DNA from: Haplodiscus bocki
Lineage: Eukaryota
NCBI GenBank assembly: GCA_965655095.1
Contig: OZ296655.1
Span: 35,340,001 to 35,404,000 of the forward strand
Reading direction: 5' to 3'
DNA: 64,000 nucleotides
The position numbers were made by a program, and so were the translations under genes. Below are positions 16,501 to 28,748 of this stretch, piece by piece; within the stretch, counting starts at the first letter, position 1; each line of letters starts with the position of its first letter. The notes beneath the pieces were generated by a model, which was not told where the DNA came from, searched no databases, and worked only from the letters and a program-made list of their open reading frames with translations.

Positions 16501-19500
16501 TTTCTGGTAATGTCATGTTTGGAAAGATTAGAATAAAGAACTGTAATTCCCACTATAGGCTCAGTGAAAATGTCACTCATTTGAAATTCCTTGTTACTTT
16601 GATACCTCCACAGAAAACCTATTATTGAGAAAATTATAATTTAAAAAAATACATTATTTATTACAGATATATATCCATAATCTATTTCTCAACCTGGAGA
16701 GGGCCTATTCTGTTCTTGTTGGCAGATACTGGTAGTGGAAGCATTGCTCCGTATTTCTAAAATCTTCAGTAAAGTCTTGTCTTCCTCATCAATATTCTCG
16801 CTTATCGGTTCATACTCCTGTATAATTCAAAGGTGGTTGGTTTCCGTTCAATACTGTCAACGGCTTCCAATAGCGTGATTCCGGTGCCTCCCGAAACGGT
16901 TGCCCCAAATCTCAGTAGCGGCATGACAAAGTTGTACAAAAATCTCAGCTCAGATCTACAGTTTAGCTTCCATAGTCGATTGATGGCAAAGATTTCAGAG
17001 TTTGCCTCCGTGATCATGCGTCTCATATGTGGTTCTAGTTGTTGAATGAGTGACGATTTTCACAAGTCATACGCAAGTATACCTGAAAACTCTACGGCCG
17101 CACCAAACATTGCAAAACTTTTGTCATTCGGAACCTTCAATAAGCGAAGACTAACAGATAATGTGAATAAAAACTATCTCGTGGATGACGCCCAAGCCTA
17201 CAACATTGATATGTTGTATTCAAGAAACAAAAATCAGCAAACAGCAAGATATCATTGTTGAGAGTATTATCGTGTTATTTGTATGAATCTCATTTAGGAC
17301 TGTATGACAATGGTTTCCTCTTAGGAGCCAAACAAGAAGCGAATGCCTTTCGTTTCTAGCGCGTATCAACGATTTTGTGTACTACAGTTTCAGGCAGAAG
17401 AATCACATTACAGATCAGAAACGATCGATGACACAAAGTTGAGAGTTCAAAAACCAAATGTTCTCTATTGAAGGAAATCGGACACAAAATTGACCATCAG
17501 CAAGAGACAACCTGACGAGCTTATCACAAAAGTGAAAGCATATGCATCACTTACAGGAAGTCGTACTGAGACAAGAGCAGAACTTGACGAATTTTGTACA
17601 CAACTCTGCAAAACGACCGCCACATGCTCGATAAGATTGGCTCAATTTCTTATTGCTGGAAATTTAACAATTGCCAAAGCGCAAAAATGCAGACAATTCA
17701 GACCAAATCGATTCAGATAAACTTAATAAAGTTTCGGCGATGATGTCTACAATGAAAGTGAAACACTCAAAAGCATAAGCAGTGTGCTTCGAACAGAAGT
17801 CAACAAATGCAATTAAAAGTTGTCTGTCCGTTGTTGACGGGGATGCAGCTGTGTTGAAATGTGCTCAAGGTACAACCACGCAGCTTGCCTAGGCGTGGAC
17901 GAAGCTGTGACCAACATGCTGGTAAATCTTTTCGGATGTTTCTGGTAATGTCATGTTTGGAGAGATTAGAATAAAGAACTGTAATTCCCACTATAGGCTC
18001 AGTGAAAATGTCACTCATTTGAAATTCCTTGTTACTTTGATACCTCCACAGAAAACCTAGTATTGAGAAAATTATAATTAAAAAAATACATTATTTATTA
18101 CAGATATATATCCATAATCTATTTCTCAACCTGGAGGGGGCCTATTCTGTTCTTGTTGGCAGATACTGGTAGTGGAAGCATTGCTCCGTATTTCTAAAAT
18201 CTTCAGTAAAGTCTTGTCTTCCTCATCAATATTCTCGCTTATCGGTTCATACTCCTGTATAATTCAAAGGCGGTTGGTTTCCGTTCAATACTGTCAACGG
18301 CTTCCAATAGAGTGATTCCGGTGCCTCCCGAAACGGTTGCCCCAAATCTCAGTAGCGGCATGACAAAGTTGTACAAAAATCTCAGCTCAGATCTACAGTT
18401 TAGCTTCCGCAGTCGATTGATGGCAAAGATTTCAGAGTTTGCCTTCGTGATCATGCGTCTCATATGTGGTTCTAGTTGTTGAATGAGTGACGATTTTCAC
18501 AAGTCATACGCAAGTATACCTGAAAACTCTACGGCCGCACCAAACATTGCAAAACTTTTGTCATTCGGAACCTTCAATGTTCGAAGACTAACAGATAATG
18601 TGAATAAAAACTATCTCGTGGATGACGCCCAAGCCTACAACATTGATATGTTGTATTCAAGAAACAAAAATCAGCAAACAGCAAGATATCATTGTTGAGA
18701 GTATTATCGTGTTATTTGTATGAATCTCATTTAGGACTGTATGACAATGGTTTCCTCTTAGGAGCCAAACAAGAAGCGAATGCCTTTCGTTTCTAGCGCG
18801 TATCAACGAATTTGTGTATTACAGTTTCAGGCAAAAGAATCACATTACAGATCAGAAACGATCGAAGACACAAAGTTGAGAGTTCAAAAACCAAATGTTC
18901 TCTATTGAAGGAAATCGGACACAAAATTGACCATCCGCAAGAGACAACCTGACGAGCTTATCACAAAAGTGAAAGCATATGCATCACTTACAGGAAGTCG
19001 TACTGAGACAAGAGCAGAACTTGACGAATTTTGTACACAACTCTGCAAAACGACCGCCACATGCTCGATAAGATTGGATCAATTTATTATTGCTGGAAAT
19101 TTAACAATTGCCAAAGCGCAAAAAATGCAGACAATTCAGTCCAAATCGTCAAAACTCAATTAGTTTGCACTAGGAATTCGAGACCTGGAGCGAAAATTAA
19201 ACATTTGCACTCATATTGTTTGAAAAAAAGTAATGATTTTAATTGCCAGCAAAATTAATTTCATAAGACAGGAAATGTTCTGACCTGGTGGCTGTTTAGC
19301 CTCTATCGAGTAGCTCTTTCCTTGGACGACTGTAGTCAATCTAAGAAATCTGTATTGTACATTTCTGATCCCGGTTTGTTTTAATTGCAGCAATTATTTC
19401 TGATAATTACAACCAAACGAAATTTATAAAAACTCGTTAATTATATCATTGATAGTAAGTCCAAACAACTGGTCCAAAAATGTTTCAAAAGATTGAAGGT

Positions 19501-20139
19501 GAATTTTGCATTGCGCCGAAAATTTAAAGCACCTAAGAACTACATTTCTCGATGATTAAATAAAAACAATTCGGGCTTCGGAGTAGTCTGGAATTCTTCG
19601 GCACTTTGAAAAGCAATTTTTCGGCGCAATCAATACCCACTAAGAGTGAAAAGTCAAAGAAAGCTAAAGCACGGCTCCGAGTCCAACGATCAAAGATTGG
19701 AGCCCGAGCGTCCTTTACATGTTCGTCAATGATGTAAAAGACTTCCGTATTCACTTTCGGAGAAAACACAAGGAACAGCATCTAAAAAAAAATATCTAGA
19801 AGTCAATCGCGGACAATTGTTTAGTCCCAAGCAATGGAATAGCATCAAATACCGTAAATAAAATTTCAAATTCAGAAAGAGATATGAAAACTCAATCGAA
19901 AAAATATAATGATCAACAGATTAAAATTTTGAGCATCATGAAATTATAATTAAAGCAACCACTAAGTTTGTAGTCAACCTCAGACGCGAAGCTCGGAAAT
20001 CGGATCTGTACTGTAATGCCTGGCACGCTAGGCCATTCAGGAATAGGTTCGAATTCTTCCAGCTCTACCAGGCGTTGCTACATATAGGGTAGTGCGTCAT
20101 ATAAATCAGTGCTCAAAAAAATATAAAATTGAGCGCCCG

Positions 20140-20168
20140 GCCTATTCGTTGCGATAAACTTATTAAAG
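20140..20168 (+). other. Degenerate leader relic before the PHD ORF (further copies 3124-3152, 9916-9944, 12367-12395, 14815-14843; 3' half retained in short units)
   Basis: GCCTATTCGTTGCGATAAACTTATTAAAG differs from the reconstructed 31-mer by 3 substitutions and a 2-nt gap. The ATG follows after a short 7-8 nt spacer. Confidence 0.6.
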
Positions 20169-20176
20169 TTCCGGCG

Positions 20177-20410
20177 ATGATATCTACAATGAAAGTGAAA
20201 AGACACTCAAAAGCAGAAGCAGTGTGTTTCGAACAGAAGTCAACAAATGCAACTAAATATTTTCTGTCCGTGGTTGACGGGGAATCAGCTGTGTTGTGAA
20301 ATGTGCTCAAGGTACATCCACGGAGTTTGCCTAGACGTGGAGGAAGCTGTGACCAACATGCTGGTAAATCTTTTCGGATGTTTCTGGTAATGTCATGTTT
20401 GGAGAGATTA
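20177..20410 (+). pseudogene. Decayed PHD-finger ORF N-terminus, probably the 5' end of a PHD-type LINE ORF1 (one copy per array A unit, first at ~3160-3390)
   Basis: Across frameshifts it reads NKCN/KCF...CEMCSRYIHGVCLDVEEAVTNMLVNLFGCFW*CHVW, matching the C4-H-C3 PHD spacing CxxC...CxxCx4HxxC...WxCxxC with the last Cys lost. It is comparable to the PHD at 25338-25485. Confidence 0.7.
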
Positions 20411-20672
20411 GAATAAAGAACTGTAATTCCCACTATCAGCTCAAAAGCTCAGTGAAATTGTCACTCATTTGAAATTCCTTCTTACTTTGATACCTCCAAA
20501 AAAACTTATTATTGATAAAATTATAATTTCAAAAAAATACATTATTTATTACAGGTATATATCCATAATCTATTGCTCAACCTGGAGGGGGCCTATTCTG
20601 TTCTTGTTGGCAGATACTGGTAGTGGATGCATTGCTCCGTATTTCTAAATACTTCAGTAAAGTCTTGTCTTC

Positions 20673-20678
20673 CTCAGC
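20673..20678 (+). other. Left copy of putative target-site duplication CTCAGC (right copy 27867-27872)
   Basis: Uninterrupted units read TCTTCCTCAGCAATATTCTC. The left junction is TCTTCCTCAGC|CTAATT and the right junction is GTCT|CTCAGCAATATTCTC. Confidence 0.7.
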
Positions 20679-20718
20679 CTAATTGTTGCCTTTTTGTTGT
20701 GATAAACTTATTAAATAG
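20677..20718 (+). other. Candidate spliced-leader-derived sequence at the 5' end of the LINE insertion
   Basis: Reads GCCTAATTGTT + GCCTTTTTGTTGTGATAAACTTATTAAATAG. It is homologous to the motif before the PHD ORF in array A, although flanking sequences are unrelated, and it ends in AG. The spliced-leader identity is inferred. Confidence 0.6.
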
Positions 20719-21059
20719 TTTGAGATATTAGGTGTGAGCTGACCGTGGAGTCACTGGAGTGGATGTGGACATCACTTCTCGGCTAATCAATTACAATAGA
20801 TATCGGTAGAGAGCAGAGCTACCGATATCGCGGAGTATCCAAGCGCATATACGCCAGTCATCACCTTGGATCCGACGATATCCATCTCAGCGAGCAAGGT
20901 CTAGTGGGTCTCCGCAGCATCCTCAAAAACAACATTCTCTACGAGAACTACAGCACGGACATCCACAACGCCGGCCACATCCAACGCCGAGTGCTCGTCA
21001 ACAAGTGCAAGTGCGGCCTCTACTCAGCCTAAACCAGGTTAGAATTTCCCCAGCTTCCA

Positions 21060-21472
21060 CAGGCACCCTCCGAGGTCCTCTGAAGCTGCCTCTTTCCTTG
21101 TATCTAGTGTTCCTTGCTTACCTCGCTCCAGGTACCTCACGAGTTTCCGAGATTTTTCCCTTCTCAGCCAAACCAAACATCATTTTATCCTACCGTCTCC
21201 GCCAACAATTTTCTCCTGGGCACCTTCCGGGCTCCTCCTGAGAAATCTCTTCCACTTTCTCCTGGGCACCCTCCGGGGTCCTCCTAAGGAATCTCTTCTG
21301 CTTTCTCCTGGGCACCCTCCGGGGTCTTCCTGAGTACTCTCTTCCGCTAACTCTTTGCCACCCTCTTCGCCAAAAAATTTCTCCTGGGCACCCTCCGGGG
21401 TCCTTCTGAGAATTCTCTTCTGTTATCTATCGGGAACATCTCGTGGGCACCCCCCGGGGTCTTCCTAAGAGC
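21060..21472 (+). repeat. GC-rich ~46-bp monomer repeats in the LINE-a 5' UTR
   Basis: TTCTCCTGGGCACCCTCCGGGGTCCTCCTGAG-like copies start at 21211, 21257 and 21303 (period 46), 21379 and ~21438, with a degenerate copy at ~21060. Confidence 0.9.
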
Positions 21473-21567
21473 ATAAGATCCCCGCCTCACAATGACATCT
21501 AGAACTTGTCTCCCCTCAGACAAGAACTATTATCAACTATTATCATACCATCGCAGAGCTTCTCACA

Positions 21568-22353
21568 GTGGAGCCAGTAGAACTGAGCAGCTTCACCGGC
21601 AGGTCCAACAAAGCTACATTAGAATGCCTCCTCAGAGAGGCTCTATCCCAGCTTGCCGATGCCAAAGCGCAAAACAACGGACTCGTCCAAAGACTTGCCT
21701 CCAACGAAAGCAAGTTCGAGGAAATCAAAGAAGTGGTCATAAACAAATTAGAATCAGCAATGCCAGTTCAAGCCTCAGGTCCCTCTGCGCAATACCAAGC
21801 TCAAAAAGAGCCTGCTTTACCCCAGCAAAAAGCGGTCTCTCAAAGCATTCTGTGCCAAATAAGAATCGATGGATTTCCCGAGGCCACCACATCCTCTCCG
21901 GAGAACCCAGATAACACTACCAGCATCGTCAACCAGGAATCAGCGAAAGTCAAAGAGGTTCTCGACTTCTTAGATGAAAGACCAACCATTGTCGATGCGC
22001 GACGCCTCGGAAAATTCAAACCATCATTCAAAGAGAAACGCACCCGGCCCCGGTCAACCTTGCTAACCGTGGCAAACGTCTGGGAGGCAAAACAAATCCT
22101 GGTGAAAGCTTCACTACTCCGAGGCTTCACCAAATCTAAAGCCTTCCTCTCCCCCAGTCTCTCTCAAGAAGACATCATCAAAGAACGCAAAGTCCTCAAA
22201 AAGCGTCGAGAGCTGATAAACTCAGGCGTTCAGGCCAAATCGCTTAAAATCAAAAACTTTCAACTGTTTCTAGACAACGTCCTGGTCGATGACCTTACAT
22301 GCGAAGACGAGAAGAGGCCTCCTTATGGAGGCAGTGCTGCTTCCTCTGCCTAA
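21568..22353 (+). CDS. LINE-a ORF1 (coiled coil plus RRM/CTD-like nucleic-acid chaperone)
   Basis: Motifs QIRIDGFPE, IVDARRLGKF..RPRSTLLTV and FLSPSLSQEDIIKERKVLKKRRELINSG..LKIKNFQLFLDN. The frame is open from 21496; the likely ATG at 21492 is one base out of frame. Confidence 0.85.
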   Translation: MEPVELSSFTGRSNKATLECLLREALSQLADAKAQNNGLVQRLASNESKFEEIKEVVINKLESAMPVQASGPSAQYQAQKEPALPQQKAVSQSILCQIRIDGFPEATTSSPENPDNTTSIVNQESAKVKEVLDFLDERPTIVDARRLGKFKPSFKEKRTRPRSTLLTVANVWEAKQILVKASLLRGFTKSKAFLSPSLSQEDIIKERKVLKKRRELINSGVQAKSLKIKNFQLFLDNVLVDDLTCEDEKRPPYGGSAASSA

Positions 22354-25175
22354 CTATACCAGTCACTTTCTATTCTCTCTTACAACGTTCGAAGCCTCAT
22401 ATCTCAGCAAAGAAGAACCTGCATTGCAAACTTCATCACAGCCAACCCCTTCGACATCCTATGCCTCTGCGAAACCTGGCTTGACAGCAGTTTCAGAGAC
22501 ACTGAACTCTTCCTCCCCAAGTACAACTGCCTACGTTCTGAAGGAGATGCATCCCAGCACGGTGGGGTGCTCACGGTTGTCAGAAGCTCTATCAGCCATG
22601 AAATAATCCCGCTCTCTCTACCCGCTGGCTGCTGCTGTGTTGCCACCACTATCCAATCAAACAAGCCTTTTGTAATTGTTAACGCTTACAACCCACCATC
22701 AGGCAGCAACTACAGATGGCAACTATCCATTTTCGAGTCCATTCTGTGCCAAGTAAAATCATCAACCTCCAAACTTCAAGTTATTCTAACAGGAGACCTC
22801 AACCTGTCAGGGATAAACTGGGAGGACAACTCGACAAACTCGGACTACGAACTAAAATGCATTGACTTCTTCATGGAGCACAATCTGCATCAACTGAATC
22901 ATTCCATCACGACCGCTTCCAAAACTCTGGATCTCTGCCTCACAGATAACTCCGATCTAGTCATATCCTCTCTAGCGATGGACGACGCATATCTAAACAA
23001 CTCGCCACTCTCAGACTACCACCCTGTCTCCATCAAACTAAATGTCAGTGCCTTAGCACCCTTCAAAGGGTTTCCAAGTCCTTCAATTTCAACAAAATTG
23101 ATCACGACGGGCTCAACAGGGCTGCTCTCGATTCCCAATTCCGGCCGTACTGCTGGACAAACCCCGCGCTTCTCCTAGCCCTCTGGCATGAATGGCTCAA
23201 ACCTCTGCTTAACAAGTTCTTACCTCTGAAATCTGTGCATCGCTCTCGACTACCACCCTGGATCTCGCCAGAGACTTCTTACCTGATGAAGAAACTCATC
23301 ACGCTCGAAAGCAATCCAAAACTCAACACATCGTACCAAACCAAACTGCTCTCACTCAAAGAAAGAGTATATTCCAGCGCCGATGATGACCTGTGTACTT
23401 ACCAGGCACGTCTTTCCGAGAGCCGAAACTCCAAACACATCTTCAAACATTTGAAGAATCTTAAGAAGGGGGCCCACCTCCCTCCCGTTCTCAAAAACGG
23501 TGCCGACTCTGCACATAGCACTCTCGAGAAAGCCCACTTGCTAAATCAATACTTTCATTCAGTATTCAATACCAAATCCTCCGAGCCAGCCTTACCTCCT
23601 GAAGCATTCGACTATCACCCCGACAGTTCATTCGACACCTCAGTCAGCAAAGTCACCTTGATCCTATCAAATCTCGACACTCCGAAAGCCACGGGGGCTG
23701 ACGGCTTACCGCCACGCCTTCTCAAAACCTGCTGAACCGGCATAGCAAAAACCCTATTCAATATTTTCACCAAATCCAAACAAATGGGCAAATTCCCTTC
23801 CCAGAGGAAAATTGCACGCATCAAACCTCTGTTTAAAAACGGAGCAAAAGACTCAGTCTCCAATTACAGGCCAGTTGCCCTACTTCCCTGCGCAAGCAAA
23901 GTCTTGGAAAAATGTATCTACACCAAAGTCTGGGAAATCATCTCCCCTACCCGCTCTGAAGCCCAATATGGATTCAGAAAAGGGCGCTCCTGTATAATCC
24001 AACTACTAGCCTCGCTCAACATTATCTTCAACAGCAAAGATCAGAAGTTAACAACCCACGCGCTCTATCTTGACCTCCGCAAAGCTTTCGACAAAGTCGA
24101 CCACTCAATTCTGCTAAGGAAACTTTATGCAAAGGGAATTCGAGGAAAACTTCTTCTACTCATCCAGGACTACCTAACAAACAGAAAACAGCACGTCGAC
24201 GTCGATGGTAGTGTGTCCGGTAATCTAGATGTAACCAGCGGAGTCCCACAGTGGGCTCTTCTTACAGTACTCTTCTTTCTGGTTTACATCGACGATCTGC
24301 CCGAACTGATCAAGTTAGTCCACGCGACTATATTCATGTTAGTCGACGATGGGAAATTAAAAGCGTCAAACTCACAACTCTTCAATGCCCTCCCAGTCCT
24401 CTTAAAGTGGGCCTCGACCAACAAAATGTGCTTCCACCCCTCCAAAAGTAAAGTAATCTGCTTCCACGGTCCTCCTCCAGAGTACACGTTCTGCAATGTG
24501 AAACTCGAAGTCGTAGACTCCCACCGCGACCTGGGACTCCTCGTCAACAGCAGTCTCACCTGGTCCGATCATATCTCACTCCGCCTAGGAAAAGCTTATG
24601 GAGCTTTCTACCTTCTGAAACGAAATGTCTCTCCCAACCTCAGCACCTCCTCTAAGCTAAATCTCTACAAAAGCACAGTCCTATCTGTTCTCTGCTTTGC
24701 ATCTTCCTGTTGGTTCCCCTCTCGCTGGGACATGAAGAAAACTGTGCAACTCCAGAAAAGAGTAACAAACTGGATCATCCCATCTATCAAGGATTACAAA
24801 GACCGCCTCATAAAGCTCGACTTACTCCCAGTCCCTCTATACCTACAAATGCTTGATATCCTCCTAATTTTAAACATCTGCCACGGACAGTATGACTTCA
24901 ACCTCGAAGGTTTTCTATCCCTCGAACAAGGACCTAGAAGAGAAGATCGCATCATCCCAGTCGTCCAAACTACCAAATTTGAAAATGCTCAACAAGAATT
25001 CTTCACAAGAACCTGCCGCCTCATCAGATTCCTCCCCTGTTTGGATATCACCAAAACATTTGGGTTGAAACCCAAAATTCTCCGCAACTTCTGGAACTTC
25101 TTTGAAACAAAGTATAATCAAAACAACCTGCGCACCTGGCGAATAGCTTGCAGATGCCCTCAATGCACTGCATAA
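22354..25175 (+). pseudogene. LINE-a ORF2 (APE endonuclease plus reverse transcriptase), with one frameshift and one nonsense codon
   Basis: Endonuclease motifs: SYNVRSL, LCETWL, YNPPSG, GDLNL, TLDL, SDYHP. Frameshift at ~23060-23075 and in-frame TGA at 23733-23735. RT motifs: NYRPVALL, QYGFRKGRS, DLRKAFDKVDH, SGVPQW, LVDD, DLG. C-terminus NFWNFF..RTWRIACRCPQC. Confidence 0.95.
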
Positions 25176-25182
25176 ACTGCCC

Positions 25183-25244
25183 GGGAGAAATCCCTACAAC
25201 TTTCTGTTGTAAATCCGATAATTATTATTAATATTATTATTATT
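25183..25244 (+). other. LINE-a 3' terminus: twin stem-loops plus (ATT)n tail
   Basis: GGGA-GAAA-TCCC (25183-25194) is followed directly by TACAAC-TTTCT-GTTGTA (25195-25211), then ATAATTATTATTAATATTATTATTATT. Confidence 0.8.
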
Positions 25245-25271
25245 GCCCTTTTCAATATACATTGTCGGAAT

Positions 25272-26055
25272 ATGGCGGCAGCTGGCTCACGTATCCGCGT
25301 AAACTCTACATCTTCGGCAAAGGATTACAAAAACAATTGCGGCATATGTAATAAAAAGGTGAACAATGGTATTGCCTGTGACAAGTGCAATGTCTGGTTT
25401 CATGGTCCCTTTGTCAACCTAACCTCAGACCAACTATCAGTCCTGGAATCACTCAAGACCACCTGTTGGTACTGTGACTCTTGTTACGAAACACGAGCGG
25501 AATCCTTCGAGCTCAAGGAAAAAATCTGCTCCATACAGGAATCTCTCAACGATTTTAAAAACACAATGCATAAAAGCAAAGATCCCAAAATTGACATTCG
25601 AAAAGAAAGTTTATCTCCAACCGATAATCATCGATACCTAAAAAAAATAGTGGGTGTACCTGAAAACAACCTGAGATTTTCAAGTGATCGGAAACTTCGC
25701 GACAAAGAAATTATAGAGGATATTGCTACTGAACTAAAACTTCATAACGTACAAGTCTCTGACTGCCACCGTAATGGTAAGTTTAATAATTCGAAACGCC
25801 GGCCTATCATTGCCTTTTTTTCATCCATTTTGGGACGCTAGGCGAAAGGTCAGCAAAAGCATTGAAAGAAAGCTATTCCAAGAAAAAGGTATTTTTGTCC
25901 TAGCCCAGTTCTCACAAAGCGACCAAGAAATTGAAAGATGCCTTCTTGCCAGGAGATATACCCTTATCAATGATGGAACCGATAAATCACGTATCAAGAT
26001 TCGTAACCTCAATCTCTACATTGATGGCAAAGAAATTGCGCATAACGACAATTGA
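25272..26055 (+). pseudogene. LINE-b ORF1 (PHD finger plus RRM/CTD-like region), frameshifted near 25820
   Basis: CGICNKKVNNGIACDKCNVWFHGPF...WYCDSC, then IVGVPE and DCHRNGKF..RRPII. The second frame carries FSQSDQEIERCLLARRYTLINDG..IKIRNLNLYIDG, paralleling the LINE-a ORF1 C-terminus. Confidence 0.88.
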
Positions 26056-27801
26056 CTAGTACAACCACTCAAAATTGATATTTTACTATACAATGTGCGC
26101 AGCTTGTGTTCCTTTGAAAAACAAGTTAAACTTGCTAATCGACTAGCACTTCTTGATGCCGATGCTGCCTGTCTCACTGAAACCTGGCCTAACTCTTCAA
26201 TCGGCGACTCCAATATTTTTTCAAGTAGTTATTCGACCTCGGCTAGGGTTGACAGAGCGACAGGTGAACATGGGGGATGCCTTATCCTTACCAAGAAAAC
26301 TAGATAAACTGACCAGATTGATTCCACTGTAGATTTTGGTTGCGCCACGAAATTACACACCTGCTGCCAGGACCTGTTGTTTATCTGCATCTATAACCCC
26401 CCTTTCTCCAGTAAATTCCTCAGCGCGGCTATCGATATCATCAATTTTCTCACACATGTGATTAACCAGAACAGCAACCTACCCACTGTTATTTGTGGCG
26501 ACTTCAACATGCCCGATGTAATTTGGGATACATACCATAGCCATTCATCAGACTCAGTTCAAATATTAAACTTTCTCATCAATCATGGGTTTGAACAATT
26601 AGTTACACTGCCAACGCATATTAATGGTAACACTCTTGATCTAATATTTGTCAACTTCTCTACTTGCCATATTTCTGAAGTTGGCACTGGCATTACTGAT
26701 TTTTCTGATCATTTTCTGATCAGTTTTCAGTGCTATTTTGACAATAAAAAGACACATCTGTCCAATTGCAACCACAAAGTCCACATCCCACCAGAATGTT
26801 ATTCTTATCTTCAACCGGAAATTGCCTCGTCGCTTTTCTCTGTTCTTTCTCCCATTACCAGTGAAAACTATACTAATGATTGGCTTGAAAACTTTGCTCA
26901 GCTTCTATCATTGTGTTACCGAAAGAAGCGCCAAAAACGTCAAAATGCCCCTTTCTATTAGTCTTCCCACACCATGCACCTGCTAAATGTCCTCAACACT
27001 GCCAAACGACGCTGTGAGAATTATCCCTTGGCCTTAAACTTGAGGAAAATGAGCGCGATTGCTGCTCGCGACGTCAACATTTTTTTATCGAACTTGACAC
27101 CGCCGTTATCGCTAAATATCGAAAATACTGCTATCCCTGCTTCCAATACTGTCAAAGACCTAGGTCTTACTATCAGCTCTAACCTGTCCTGGTCAAGCCA
27201 TATCGAATTCAAAGTTAAATCTGCGTATTCAATCTTCTACAACCTCAAGAGATCAAAACCGCCCAACAACCACTGGCACACGAAGATCACTTTGTTTAAA
27301 TCCTACATTCTTTCTACAGTTTTATACGCCTCTGAAATTTGGTGCCCAAGTAAGACAAATTTGACTCGTCTAGAACTTTTACAATCTCGTGTGTTGAAAT
27401 GGGCCTTCCCTGGATCCAACAATAAAGAACGCTTATCGAAAGCTAAAATGCTGCCCATATTGTTGGAAATACAGCTCCGACCGCTTATTCTCTTGAACAG
27501 ACTACTAAATGGATTTTACAGCAATTTTCCTTTTTTATCACATATCTCTTTCACGATCCAAAATTCTGGTGCATACAACACCCGGTTATCTGAAAAGCCT
27601 ATGTTCCATCAGCCGAAAGTCAAGAAGACACGAACGACTCACGATTTCTTCTACCTAGTGCCAAAACTTGTGAACTACTTCCATGCAAACACGAATCTGG
27701 ACATATTCAAAAACCCCGCTAGTTTCAAATATACTGCTGCGGCCGAGTTCAACAAATTATTTTTGTTAAAAATCTGTAACCTCGATCGGCTGTACATGTA
27801 A
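26056..27801 (+). pseudogene. LINE-b ORF2: APE endonuclease fused to the RT C-terminus, RT catalytic core absent
   Basis: Endonuclease motifs YNVRSL, LTETW, EHGG, IYNPP, GDFNMP, GNTLDL, SDH, with stops at 26305 and 26959. RQNAPFY (26938) is only ~220 nt from DLG (27157), versus ~1290 nt between the equivalent points in LINE-a. Confidence 0.88.
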
Positions 27802-27872
27802 TTTTCGACTTCCCATATACGTGGCTTTCATAGCAATTCAAGTCTTTCTCTCTCAAGTCTGTGTCTCTCAGC

Positions 27873-28748
27873 AATATTCTCCCTTATCGGTTCATACACC
27901 TGCAAAATTCAAAGGCGGTTGGTTTCCGTTAAATACTGTCAAGGGCTTCCAATAGAGTGATTCCAGTGCCTCCCGAAACGGTTGCTCCAAATTTGAGTAG
28001 CAACATGACAAAGTTGTACAAAAATCTCAGCTCAGATCTACAGTTTAGCTTCCTCAGTCGATTGATGGCGAAGATTGCAGGGTTTGACTTCGTGATCATG
28101 CGTCTCATATGGGGTTCTAGTTGTTGAATGAGTGACGATTTTCACAAGTTATACGCAAGTATACCTGAAAACTCTACGGCCGCACCAAACCTTGCAAAAC
28201 TTTTGTCATTCGGAACCTTCAACATTCAAAGACTAACAGATAATGTGAATAGAAACTATCTCGTCGATGACGCCCAAGCCTACAACATTGATATGTTGTA
28301 TTCAAGAAACAAAAATCAGCAAACAGCAAGATATCATTGTTGAGAGTCATTATCGTGTTATTTGTATGAATCTCACTTAGGACTGTATGACAATGGGTTC
28401 CTCTTAGGAGCCAAACAAGAAGCAGATTTCTTTCGTTTCTAGCGCGTATCAACGAATTTGTGTATTACAGTTTCACGCAGAAGAATGACATTACAGATCA
28501 GAAACTATCGATGACACAAAGCTGAGAGTTCAAAAACCAAATGTTCTCTATTGAAGGAAATCGGACACAAAATTGACCATCAGCAAGAGACAACCTGACG
28601 AGATTATCACAGAAGTGAAAGCATATGCATCACTTGCAGGATGTCGTACTGAGACAAGAGCAGAAGTTGACAAATTTTGTACACAACTCTGCAAAACGAC
28701 CGCCACATGCTCGAGAAGATTGGCTCAATTTCTTTTTCCTGGAAATTT
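27873..28748. repeat. Remainder of the last array A unit, after the LINE insertion
   Basis: Resumes the unit sequence AATATTCTC.CTTATCGGTTCATAC exactly where it broke off at 20678 and matches the unit up to GGAAATTT at 28741-28748. Confidence 0.93.

What the first reader, a model, noticed from the sequence alone, without database searches (positions are those of the whole stretch)
20696..20730. Integrated leader may regenerate its own trans-splice acceptor, allowing promoter-independent mobilisation
Seen in sequence: the DNA copy of the leader is T/A-rich and ends ...CTTATTAAATAG|TTTGAG, a YAG at the leader/element boundary. Inference: if a read-through transcript is trans-spliced at this AG, the flank is discarded and an identical capped SL-LINE RNA is regenerated each cycle. 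This would be functionally analogous to the HDV-like 5' ribozymes of R2/RTE elements, but using the host spliceosome.
Basis: inference. Interest (0 to 1): 0.75.

Follow-up and report, generated by a model that had tools for sequence, protein, structure and literature searches.

The report
Host spliced leader heading a dead LINE
The 31-base tag is the animal's own mRNA spliced leader, copied back into DNA at the front of a now-broken jumping gene; its final AG is real but comes with every leader, and no RNA data were available to test whether it lets the element renew its own leader.

Summary
20688-20718 is a copy of the spliced leader (SL) published for the acoel Symsagittifera roscoffensis. 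It has AA>TT at positions 5-6, ends ...CTTATTAAATAG, and is followed by TTTGAG at 20719.

- An extra copy of SL bases 1-11 lies at 20677-20687.
- The leader heads "LINE-b", which has a PHD-finger ORF1. Only 79 nt of it (20719-20797) follow the leader. A 5'-truncated "LINE-a" (20808-25243) is nested there, and LINE-b resumes at 25244.
- The whole insertion sits in a satellite array.

The terminal AG is the exon side of the SL gene's donor site (AG|GTAAGT), so every integrated leader carries it.

In 12 independent LINE-b copies the leader joins at the same place (one ambiguous), and no copy shares upstream sequence with another. The family tree is star-like, and leader variants are private.

The proposed re-splicing leaves no trace in DNA, and no RNA run was available, so the interpretation stays untested.

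One new clue emerged. In 10 of 12 SL-headed element families, a 3'-splice-site-like hexamer (TTTCAG-like) follows the leader directly. In 8 host-transcript-like contigs it does not.

This scan has already reported SL-headed LINEs on other pieces of this genome, and first readers there raised the same acceptor idea.

The parts
20677..20687 (+). Extra direct copy of leader bases 1-11 (GCCTAATTGTT) at the extreme 5' end of the insertion
   Evidence: A flank contig ends at 20676 and continues as the satellite unit, so this piece is part of the insertion and not of the target. Similar partial leader pieces lie 5' of the full leader in L002, L001 and L029.
20688..20718 (+). DNA copy of the 31-nt host spliced leader, locus variant with AA>TT at positions 5-6; its terminal AG is at 20717-20718
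   Evidence: Matches the published SL and the exon of SL RNA genes L022, L025 and L028. The twin locus L008 carries the same 42-nt leader.
20719..20724 (+). TTTGAG, the family-specific 3'-splice-site-like hexamer that starts LINE-b directly after the leader
   Evidence: Present in 9 of 12 LINE-b copies (TTTGAT/TTTGA in L002 and L013; gap in L006). Ten of 12 SL-headed element families start with T[TC]T[CGA]A[GTA].
20719..20797 (+). First 79 nt of the LINE-b 5' UTR (segment A)
   Evidence: In L001-L013 this segment is contiguous with TGCCC(A/T)TTTCAATATAC..ATG, which corresponds to window 25244 onwards. An X2 contig joins 20797 to that sequence.
20798..20807 (+). 10-nt filler at the 5' junction of the nested LINE-a; an inverted copy of 20821-20829
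   Evidence: AGATATCGGT is the reverse complement of ACCGATATC(T). LINE-a family contigs match only from 20808 onwards.
20808..25243 (+). LINE-a: a 5'-truncated APE+RT LINE with broken frames and an (ATT)n tail, nested in the LINE-b 5' UTR
   Evidence: ORFs and Pfam hits PF14529 and PF00078. Family contigs read a different sequence upstream of 20808. Tail seen.
25244..27870 (+). Rest of LINE-b: PHD-finger ORF1 (25272-25841), APE (26377-26961), about 1.05 kb internal deletion near 27107, CT-rich tail
   Evidence: ORF1 homologues P0001-P0029.
18226..20676 (+). Last satellite unit before the insertion; the target is ...CTTCCTCA|TCAATATTC...
   Evidence: The unit motif occurs 10 times with spacings of 1.44 or 2.45 kb, and the next expected copy falls at 20677.
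27871..27900 (+). Satellite resumes (GCAATATTCTCCC...)

Best explanation
**What it is.** The stretch is the host's spliced leader, retro-copied at the head of a non-LTR retrotransposon (LINE-b).

**How it arose.** A LINE-b source transcript received the SL by trans-splicing at an acceptor directly before TTTGAG. The SL-capped RNA was reverse-transcribed into a satellite repeat by target-primed reverse transcription. The 5' junction was closed with a short templated filler, the extra copy of SL bases 1-11. Later a 5'-truncated LINE-a inserted 79 nt downstream of the leader, and LINE-b lost about 1 kb internally.

**The AG.** The AG at the boundary is the exon side of the SL donor site (AG|GTAAGT in the SL gene), so every integrated leader has it.

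**Shown:** leader identity, the fixed junction, the nested anatomy, and that this copy is defunct.

**Inferred:** that trans-splicing, rather than another joining route, put the leader there, and that the filler arose during junction repair.

**Open, with my lean (about 55:45):** the replicating lineage of such families is itself SL-headed. No outron-bearing copy was found, and unrelated SL-headed families keep a TTTCAG-like hexamer directly after the leader, which suggests that a splice-acceptor signal is carried inside the RNA. Whether the leader's own AG is the site that is re-used is not shown.
For: **Leader identity**
- The leader equals the published SL and the exon of three SL RNA genes, which is followed there by G(T/C)AAGT.

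**Family comparison**
- Twelve independent LINE-b copies were sampled through ORF1, not through the leader. All carry the leader, full or 5'-truncated, at the same junction, and their flanks are unrelated.

**Anatomy of the locus**
- The flank contig and the satellite period give an insertion of 20677-27870.
- Segment A is contiguous with window 25244 onwards in every other copy.
- LINE-a family contigs diverge upstream of 20808, and 20798-20807 is an inverted filler.

**Family history**
- The tree is star-like, with end branches of 0.019-0.046.

**Hexamer**
- The TTTCAG-like motif occurs in 10 of 12 element families and in 0 of 8 transcript-like contigs.

**Literature**
- SL on TE transcripts is known in Hydra (PMC12220107).
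- SL exons fused to TEs in the genome are known in Schistosoma (PMC5832876).
Against: - There is no RNA evidence for this family or locus.
- Leader copies are twice as diverged as the adjacent element. The excess lies at leader positions 20-29. Simple neutral decay of a canonical leader does not predict this.
- The filler explanation does not account for the outer 11-nt copy being canonical while the inner copy carries AA>TT.
- The hexamer motif was defined after seeing the data. The element families come from several metagenome sources, so the sample is small and mixed.
Confidence: 0.85

Rival explanations
1. **The reader's model, extended.** Integrated SL-headed copies are transcribed by read-through from the flank and trans-spliced again at the leader's own AG. 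The flank is discarded and the same SL-LINE RNA is regenerated. My extension is that the element-borne TTTCAG-like hexamer just downstream helps acceptor recognition and, because it stays in the RNA, is inherited as an 'internal acceptor'.
For: - The junction is fixed in 11 of 12 copies.
- No outron-bearing copy was found among 12.
- The family majority leader is canonical, and its variants are private and do not follow the tree.
- The hexamer occurs in 10 of 12 families but in no host-like transcript.
- The leader contains a CTAAT branch-point-like motif 25 nt upstream of its AG (sequence). This alone is close to chance expectation.
- There is precedent for an integrated SL acting as acceptor in dinoflagellate retrogenes (PMC5585692).
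- By logic, a lineage whose RNA loses everything upstream of the acceptor in every cycle can keep the same junction only if the signals lie in the leader or downstream of it.
Against: - There is no RNA evidence.
- AAATAG|T is a poor acceptor by the general consensus, and in TTTCAG families the hexamer's own AG|R looks stronger. Yet hexamer-less copies are rare (at most 1 of 12 in LINE-b).
- The star-like tree shows no daughter-to-granddaughter transmission.
- The genuine SL extends 5' as ...TTTA before GCC. That creates an upstream AG, but full tandem leaders were not seen in about 25 copies.
- The fold of leader plus 5' UTR is unremarkable.
Confidence: 0.3
2. **Master with its own outron.** One or a few unsampled source copies carry their own promoter and outron ending in AG before TTTGAG. 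All SL-headed copies are dead-on-arrival daughters, and the integrated leader's AG has no function.
For: - The tree is star-like or weakly ladder-like, with inner branches of 0.002 or less, as under a master-gene model.
- All sampled copies are 2-4.6% diverged and mostly have broken frames.
- LINE-a family contigs do extend at least 452 nt upstream of the truncation point with element sequence. Longer 5' regions therefore exist in at least one family.
Against: - None of 12 LINE-b copies has shared upstream sequence.
- The model gives no reason for a 3'-splice-site-like hexamer to abut the junction in 10 of 12 unrelated families.
- At least two source variants existed, with and without the 5' UTR insertion shared by L006, L011 and L013. 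Both are joined to the SL at the same place.
Confidence: 0.35
3. **Leader inherited as DNA.** An internal promoter starts transcription at or near the leader copy, and the unspliced RNA (leader + hexamer + body) is the retrotransposition template. The hexamer is a working acceptor, used only to make translatable SL-mRNA, in the manner of spliced and unspliced retroviral RNAs.
For: - The hexamer is kept in 11 of 12 LINE-b copies, although TTTCAG|R is the better-looking acceptor in other families.
- In L017 and L024 the ORF1 ATG lies 2-3 nt after the hexamer, as at host acceptors.
- One LINE-b copy, L006, may be the spliced form.
Against: - The family majority leader is identical to the host SL at all 31 positions, and no family-specific leader variant exists.
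- Copies retain up to 4 nt (TTTA) of the genuine SL 5' extension, which is easier to explain by fresh capping with SL RNA.
- The model requires a start site placed exactly at a host-derived sequence in every new locus.
Confidence: 0.2
4. **No trans-splicing of the LINE RNA.** Reverse transcriptase jumped from the 5' end of the LINE RNA onto a free SL exon or SL RNA, or the element descends from a copy inserted in an SL gene and transcribed from the SL gene promoter.
For: - 5' junctions in this family are messy. Partial leader pieces, an inverted filler and a duplicated 5' UTR piece in L010 show template switching or templated repair at 5' ends.
- Earlier notes report LINEs inside SL genes of this genome (s1-354047, not tested here).
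Against: - No copy carries SL intron sequence (GTAAGTATTCC) after the leader.
- The join is exact at the exon end in about 25 copies from 12 families.
- Here the target is a satellite, not an SL gene.
Confidence: 0.05

Closest known systems
SL-tagged transposon transcripts in Hydra (PMC12220107) and genome-encoded SL exons fused to transposable elements in Schistosoma mansoni (PMC5832876)
   Same: The host SL is found on TE RNA or at the head of TE DNA copies. The inference is the same: the elements were trans-spliced and then retro-transcribed.
   Different: Here the junction is shown to be fixed across 12 independent copies of one LINE family. The copies have exact 5' ends, short 5' truncations and fillers, and a recurrent TTTCAG-like hexamer follows the leader. 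Neither passage I read proposes leader self-renewal.
Relict spliced leaders of dinoflagellate retrogenes (Slamovits and Keeling 2008, as cited in PMC5585692)
   Same: An SL copied into DNA with a retroposed mRNA provides an AG that can accept a new SL in the next round. The integrated leader has also been proposed to aid expression.
   Different: DinoSL has an internal AG, so re-splicing leaves truncated relicts 3' of the new leader, and these can be counted. The acoel SL has its only AG at the 3' end, so re-splicing would be traceless. The partial leader pieces seen here lie 5' of the full leader and do not fit that mechanism. The elements here are autonomous LINEs, not host retrogenes.
HDV-like self-cleaving ribozymes at the 5' ends of R2, RTE and L1Tc elements (PMC4035085)
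   Same: The proposed function is the same: release of a defined element 5' end from a co-transcript started at a host promoter.
   Different: No ribozyme is detectable (Rfam gathering scan) and the fold is unremarkable. The processing agent would be the host spliceosome, and the product would be capped by the SL.
SL-gene-specific LINEs (NeSL-1 of C. elegans; SLACS, CRE and CZAR of trypanosomatids) - from my own knowledge
   Same: LINE sequence lies next to SL sequence.
   Different: Those elements insert into SL RNA genes through a restriction-like endonuclease. Here the leader travels with an APE-type LINE into a satellite, and no SL intron follows it.
Use of a proximal AG with U2AF bound at a distal pyrimidine tract and AG (Sxl exon 3 / SPF45; first-AG scanning in step II) - from my own knowledge, not checked in papers here
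   Same: It would allow UAG|UUUCAG to be cut at the first AG while the downstream motif gives recognition.
   Different: This is purely an analogy. Nothing is known about 3' splice-site choice in acoels.

Membership tests
SL-headed (trans-spliced, then retro-copied) LINE | The 5' terminal sequence is identical to the host SL exon | tested here: met
   29 of 31 positions match the published SL at this locus, and the LINE-b family majority matches at 31 of 31. It also matches the exon of SL genes L022, L025 and L028.
SL-headed (trans-spliced, then retro-copied) LINE | The leader ends exactly at the SL exon-intron boundary, with no SL intron sequence following | tested here: met
   Genes read AAATAG|GTAAGT, while element copies read AAATAG|TTTGAG and similar.
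SL-headed (trans-spliced, then retro-copied) LINE | The same junction occurs in independent copies with unrelated flanks | tested here: met
   Eleven of 12 copies share the junction and L006 is ambiguous. Flanks show no similarity over 450 nt.
SL-headed (trans-spliced, then retro-copied) LINE | Element RNA carries a trans-spliced SL | not testable with these tools
   No RNA run was found, and the single read-laying run returned DNA-like contigs.
   No RNA data were available.
   Leader variants shared between copies (A6T, A23G, T25C) do not follow the body tree. The tree is star-like and contains no parent-daughter pair, so the test has little power.
   None of 12 copies shows shared upstream sequence. 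A single unsampled master cannot be excluded.
   There is a YAG, a U-rich stretch and a CTAAT 25 nt upstream, but positions -6 to -4 are AAA and +1 is T. A TTTCAG-like hexamer follows in 10 of 12 families. The species' own consensus was not available.
HDV-like ribozyme 5' processing (R2, RTE, L1Tc) | A nested double-pseudoknot ribozyme lies at the element's 5' end | tested here: not met
   The Rfam gathering scan of the whole window gave 0 matches. Fold z-scores were +0.6 to +0.7.
SL-gene-targeting LINE (NeSL, SLACS, CRE) | Insertion lies inside an SL RNA gene, with the SL exon split or duplicated as target | tested here: not met
   The target is a satellite unit that is continuous across the empty site. 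No SL intron follows the leader.
Dinoflagellate-type relict SL | A full leader is followed 3' by a truncated older leader starting after an internal AG | tested here: not met
   The partial pieces lie 5' of the full leader and lack its 3' end. The only AG within the 31-nt leader is terminal.

The most novel reading that the evidence does not exclude
LINEs of this acoel lineage propagate without a promoter or outron of their own, because the splice-acceptor signal is split between two parts. One part is the retro-copied leader, which supplies the branch site and the first AG and is renewed in every cycle. The other is an element-borne TTTCAG-like hexamer that lies just downstream of the junction, so it stays in the RNA and is inherited. 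This would be an 'internal acceptor', analogous to the internal promoters of other LINEs. It would explain why unrelated SL-headed families all begin with that hexamer.
Probability: 0.3. Interest if true: 0.8.

Novelty: new variant of a known kind. Interest (0 to 1): 0.5.

Why it matters
LINEs lose everything upstream of their RNA 5' end each time they copy themselves. How they secure expression at a new site is therefore a central question. The known answers are internal promoters and 5' ribozymes acting on host co-transcripts.

A life cycle that relies on the host's SL trans-splicing machinery would be a third answer. It would link the spread of LINEs to the presence of SL trans-splicing in a lineage.

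This window does not prove that. It does give a clean, dated anatomy and a family-wide fixed junction. It also gives a testable sequence clue: the acceptor-like hexamer that follows the leader in elements but not in host-like transcripts. In passing, the data suggest that the published SL is a few bases short at its 5' end.

Tried and rejected
- **RNA evidence.** Both run searches listed no run on record as RNA. The one read-laying run returned DNA-like contigs.
- **Rfam.** The scan of the window found nothing.
- **RNA structure.** Folds of leader plus 5' UTR are not more stable than shuffles. I dropped the idea of a structured leader here.
- **Pool of variant SL RNAs.** I considered this to explain the hypervariable leader positions 20-29. 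It is not supported: 8 transcript-like contigs and 3 SL genes are canonical there.
- **L006 as proof of a +6 acceptor.** A 6-bp deletion across the junction is equally parsimonious.
- **L010 as a +6 junction.** It is SL, then a 45-nt degenerate duplicate of the 5' UTR, then the 5' UTR again from +4.
- **L001 as a tandem-leader fossil.** The upstream piece matches the SL over only 17 nt, with 3 mismatches. This is too weak.
- **A longer SL gene class ending in TTTCAG.** None was found in the sequences held, and the hexamer is family-specific.
- **Other collections.** Scans of viral and prokaryotic collections for the leader found nothing.
- **Outron or 5' transduction.** An all-against-all comparison of 450-nt upstream flanks found nothing shared.
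- **Handling of sequences.** Column majorities were used inside scripts only to count differences. No consensus element was printed or saved.

Full report
**1. The observation**

Window 20677-20730 reads GCCTAATTGTT GCCTTTTTGTTGTGATAAACTTATTAAATAG TTTGAGATATT. The SL published for the acoel Symsagittifera roscoffensis is GCCTAATTGTTGTGATAAACTTATTAAATAG(A) (PMC9911081).

So 20688-20718 is a leader copy with AA>TT at positions 5-6. It is the only leader copy in the window.

Earlier notes of this scan call the genome S. roscoffensis. I can confirm only that the leader is identical. The runs that hold this stretch are a coded organism and coral metagenomes. The loci I fetched come from one ENA assembly. 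I therefore leave the species open.

**2. Anatomy of the locus**

*Insertion limits.* A contig from other runs follows the flank to 20676 and then reads TCAATATTCTCGC.... That motif is the next part of a satellite unit. It occurs ten times in the window at spacings of 1.44 or 2.45 kb and resumes at 27871. The insertion is therefore 20677-27870, and the extra GCCTAATTGTT (leader bases 1-11) belongs to it.

*Which element the leader heads.* Contigs of the LINE whose ORFs follow the leader (LINE-a; APE PF14529, RT PF00078) match only from 20808 onwards and read a different sequence upstream. One contig matches up to 20797 and continues as TGCCCATTTCAATATAC..., which is the sequence at 25244.

I fetched copies through homologues of the PHD-finger ORF1 at 25272. 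In all of them, leader + 79 nt + TGCCC..ATG is contiguous.

*Conclusions on structure.*
- The leader heads LINE-b.
- LINE-a (20808-25243, (ATT)n tail) is a 5'-truncated nested insertion.
- 20798-20807 (AGATATCGGT) is an inverted copy of 20821-20829, a junction filler.
- LINE-b continues at 25244, lacks about 1.05 kb near 27107, and ends in a CT-rich tail.
- L008 is a 99.8% twin of the whole structure, including the 42-nt leader.

This copy cannot be an autonomous source today.

**3. The AG**

A scan of metagenome contigs for the first 20 leader bases gave 23 contigs. Three are SL RNA genes...A|GCCTAATTG...AAATAG|GTAAGTATTCCAACCC... (GCAAGT in one).

The terminal AG is therefore the exon side of the SL donor site. 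Every retro-copied leader has it, so a YAG at the boundary is a given and not a feature of this element.

**4. The LINE-b family**

*Sampling.* I obtained twelve independent copies, sampled through ORF1 and not through the leader: L001-L003, L005-L007, L009-L013 and the window. L004 duplicates L003, and L008 duplicates the window.

*Junction.* All twelve carry the leader, full or 5'-truncated by 1-19 nt. Eleven have it directly before TTTGAG (TTTGAT/TTTGA in two). L006 reads ...TTCATTAG|ATATTACG. That is either use of the hexamer's own AG or a 6-bp deletion, and the two are equally parsimonious.

*Upstream sequence.* The 450 nt upstream share nothing between copies. I therefore saw no outron-bearing or 5'-transduced copy.

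*Tree.* The body tree is star-like, with end branches of 0.019-0.046 and inner branches of 0.002 or less. A 5' UTR insertion shared by L006, L011 and L013 shows at least two source variants. Both were joined to the SL at the same place.

*Leader variants.* The family majority leader is canonical at all 31 positions. Variants are private, or recur without following the tree (A6T, A23G, T25C).

**5.

The model is re-splicing of a read-through transcript at the leader AG.

- Its refutation test on genomic copies (no fixed junction) fails, so it survives that test.
- Re-splicing at the leader's terminal AG is traceless in DNA. Neither run search listed a run on record as RNA, and the contigs I laid look like DNA. 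The decisive test could not be run.
- The data do not separate three family-level models:
  - (a) SL-headed copies are re-spliced.
  - (b) An unsampled master has its own outron.
  - (c) The leader is inherited as DNA from an internal promoter.
- The star-like tree fits one source lineage and gives no parent-daughter pair with which to test leader reset.

The concept has a precedent. In dinoflagellate retrogenes the integrated SL offers an AG for the next SL. That AG is internal, so relicts remain (PMC5585692).

SL on TE RNA is known in Hydra (PMC12220107), and SL exons fused to TEs are known in Schistosoma (PMC5832876).

The comparison with HDV-like ribozymes is functional only. Rfam finds nothing, and the region does not fold better than shuffles.

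**6. A new clue**

I compared what follows the leader in two kinds of sequence I hold.

| Sequence type | Hexamer directly after the leader |
|---|---|
| Element families with the motif (10 of 12) | TTTCAG x4, TCTCAG, TTTCAT x2, TTTCAA, TTTAAG, TTTGAG |
| Element families without it (2 of 12) | ATTGAA, GAATAT |
| Transcript-like contigs (0 of 8) | GTGAAG, ATTATA, GTTTAA, ATCTAA, TTCTTG, ATTATG, ACTTGT, GTTGCC |

- In the transcript-like contigs the leader lies 2-26 nt from the contig end and is followed by host-like mRNA.
- Fisher's exact p is 0.0007. The motif was defined after seeing the data.
- The loose ends of leader-bearing contigs in the runs also continue as TTT or TTTGAGA-like before diverging.
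- The hexamer is family-specific, so it is encoded by the element.
- In L017 and L024 the ORF1 ATG follows within 2-3 nt, as at a host acceptor.

A 3'-splice-site-like motif retained just downstream of the junction is not expected if SL-headed copies are dead ends. It is expected in two cases. In one, the acceptor signal must travel inside the RNA: a composite acceptor in which the leader AG is the first AG and the hexamer provides recognition. In the other, leader + hexamer is a DNA-encoded mini-outron whose spliced product serves only as mRNA.

Against the composite reading, TTTCAG|R looks like the stronger site, yet hexamer-less copies are rare. I rate this as the most novel reading that is not excluded (probability about 0.3).

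**7. Unexplained side observations**

*Leader divergence.*
- Leader copies of LINE-b are twice as diverged as the element: 22/328 against 3.3%. Only 1 of 62 31-nt body windows reaches that rate.
- The excess lies at positions 20-29 (16/110; none of 193 10-nt body windows reaches that rate) and at positions 1-7. There are no changes at positions 8-19.
- The changes are clustered and rich in transversions.
- A pool of variant SL RNAs is not supported, because transcripts and genes are canonical there.

*Partial leader pieces.* Pieces of the leader lie 5' of the full leader in the window (bases 1-11), L002 (8-19), L001 (9-25, diverged) and L029 (7-16 and 1-9). Within LINE-b that is 3 of 12 copies, against a chance of about 0.005 per copy. 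Together with the inverted filler at the LINE-a junction, they look like templated fillers of end joining. This does not explain why the outer piece in the window is canonical and the inner copy is mutated.

*Leader 5' end.* Base -1 is A in 16 of 18 DNA copies. Transcript-like contigs read GCTTTTA before GCC, as does the flank of SL gene L028. The true leader is therefore probably a few bases longer than published.

**8. Verdict**

- The element is a new member of an already described kind, the SL-headed LINE. This scan has reported that kind many times on other pieces of this genome: s1-356309, s1-359265, s1-376373 and others.
- First readers elsewhere raised the same acceptor idea (s1-364371).
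- The self-renewal interpretation is neither shown nor refuted.
- The hexamer pattern gives the interpretation a concrete, testable form.

Noticed in passing
L014, L015, L018, L026 (contig ends); L028:523-530; base -1 of 18 leader copies: Transcript-like contigs read GCTTTTA directly before GCCTAATTG, as does the flank of SL gene L028. Base -1 is A in 16 of 18 DNA copies, and several copies keep TTA or TTTA. The true SL is probably up to 7 nt longer at its 5' end than the published 31-32 nt.
   Followed up: partly
L022:2846 (-), L025:3409 (-), L028:531 (+): These are three SL RNA genes from metagenome contigs: the exon, then G(T/C)AAGTATTCCAACCC, a U-rich Sm-like stretch (AAGTTTTATTTGA) and a GC stem (GCAGACTGCGAAAGTGGTCTGC). 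They show that acoels with this leader occur in several environmental data sets.
   Followed up: partly
window 1-20676 and 27871 onwards: The window around the insertion is a long tandem array with units of about 1.44 and 2.45 kb. AT skew changes sign near 32 kb, so the array may be inverted there.
   Followed up: partly
leader positions 20-29 in L001, L005, L006, L007, L009, L010, L012; also L017, L023, L034: The 3' third of retro-copied leaders is hypervariable, with clustered changes. A26G recurs in four independent copies. Positions 8-19 never change in LINE-b copies.
   Followed up: partly
L010:2710-2800: This LINE-b copy has leader + a 45-nt degenerate duplicate of 5' UTR bases 9-57 + the 5' UTR again from +4. 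It is a chimeric 5' end, formed by template switching or by nesting in a fragment.
   Followed up: partly
window 21210-21348: A 46-bp tandem repeat (3 copies) lies in the LINE-a 5' region, upstream of its ORF1.
   Followed up: no
window 27820-27870 versus 20655-20676: The LINE-b 3' end (..CAAGTCTGTGTCTCTCA) resembles the satellite sequence just before the insertion point (..AAGTCTTGTCTTCCTCA). This may be microhomology used in target priming, or a short diverged target-site duplication.
   Followed up: no
L002:383-413 (-), L012:1024-1054 (+): Further leader copies head other, unrelated elements within the fetched loci. SL-headed insertions are therefore dense in this genome.
   Followed up: no
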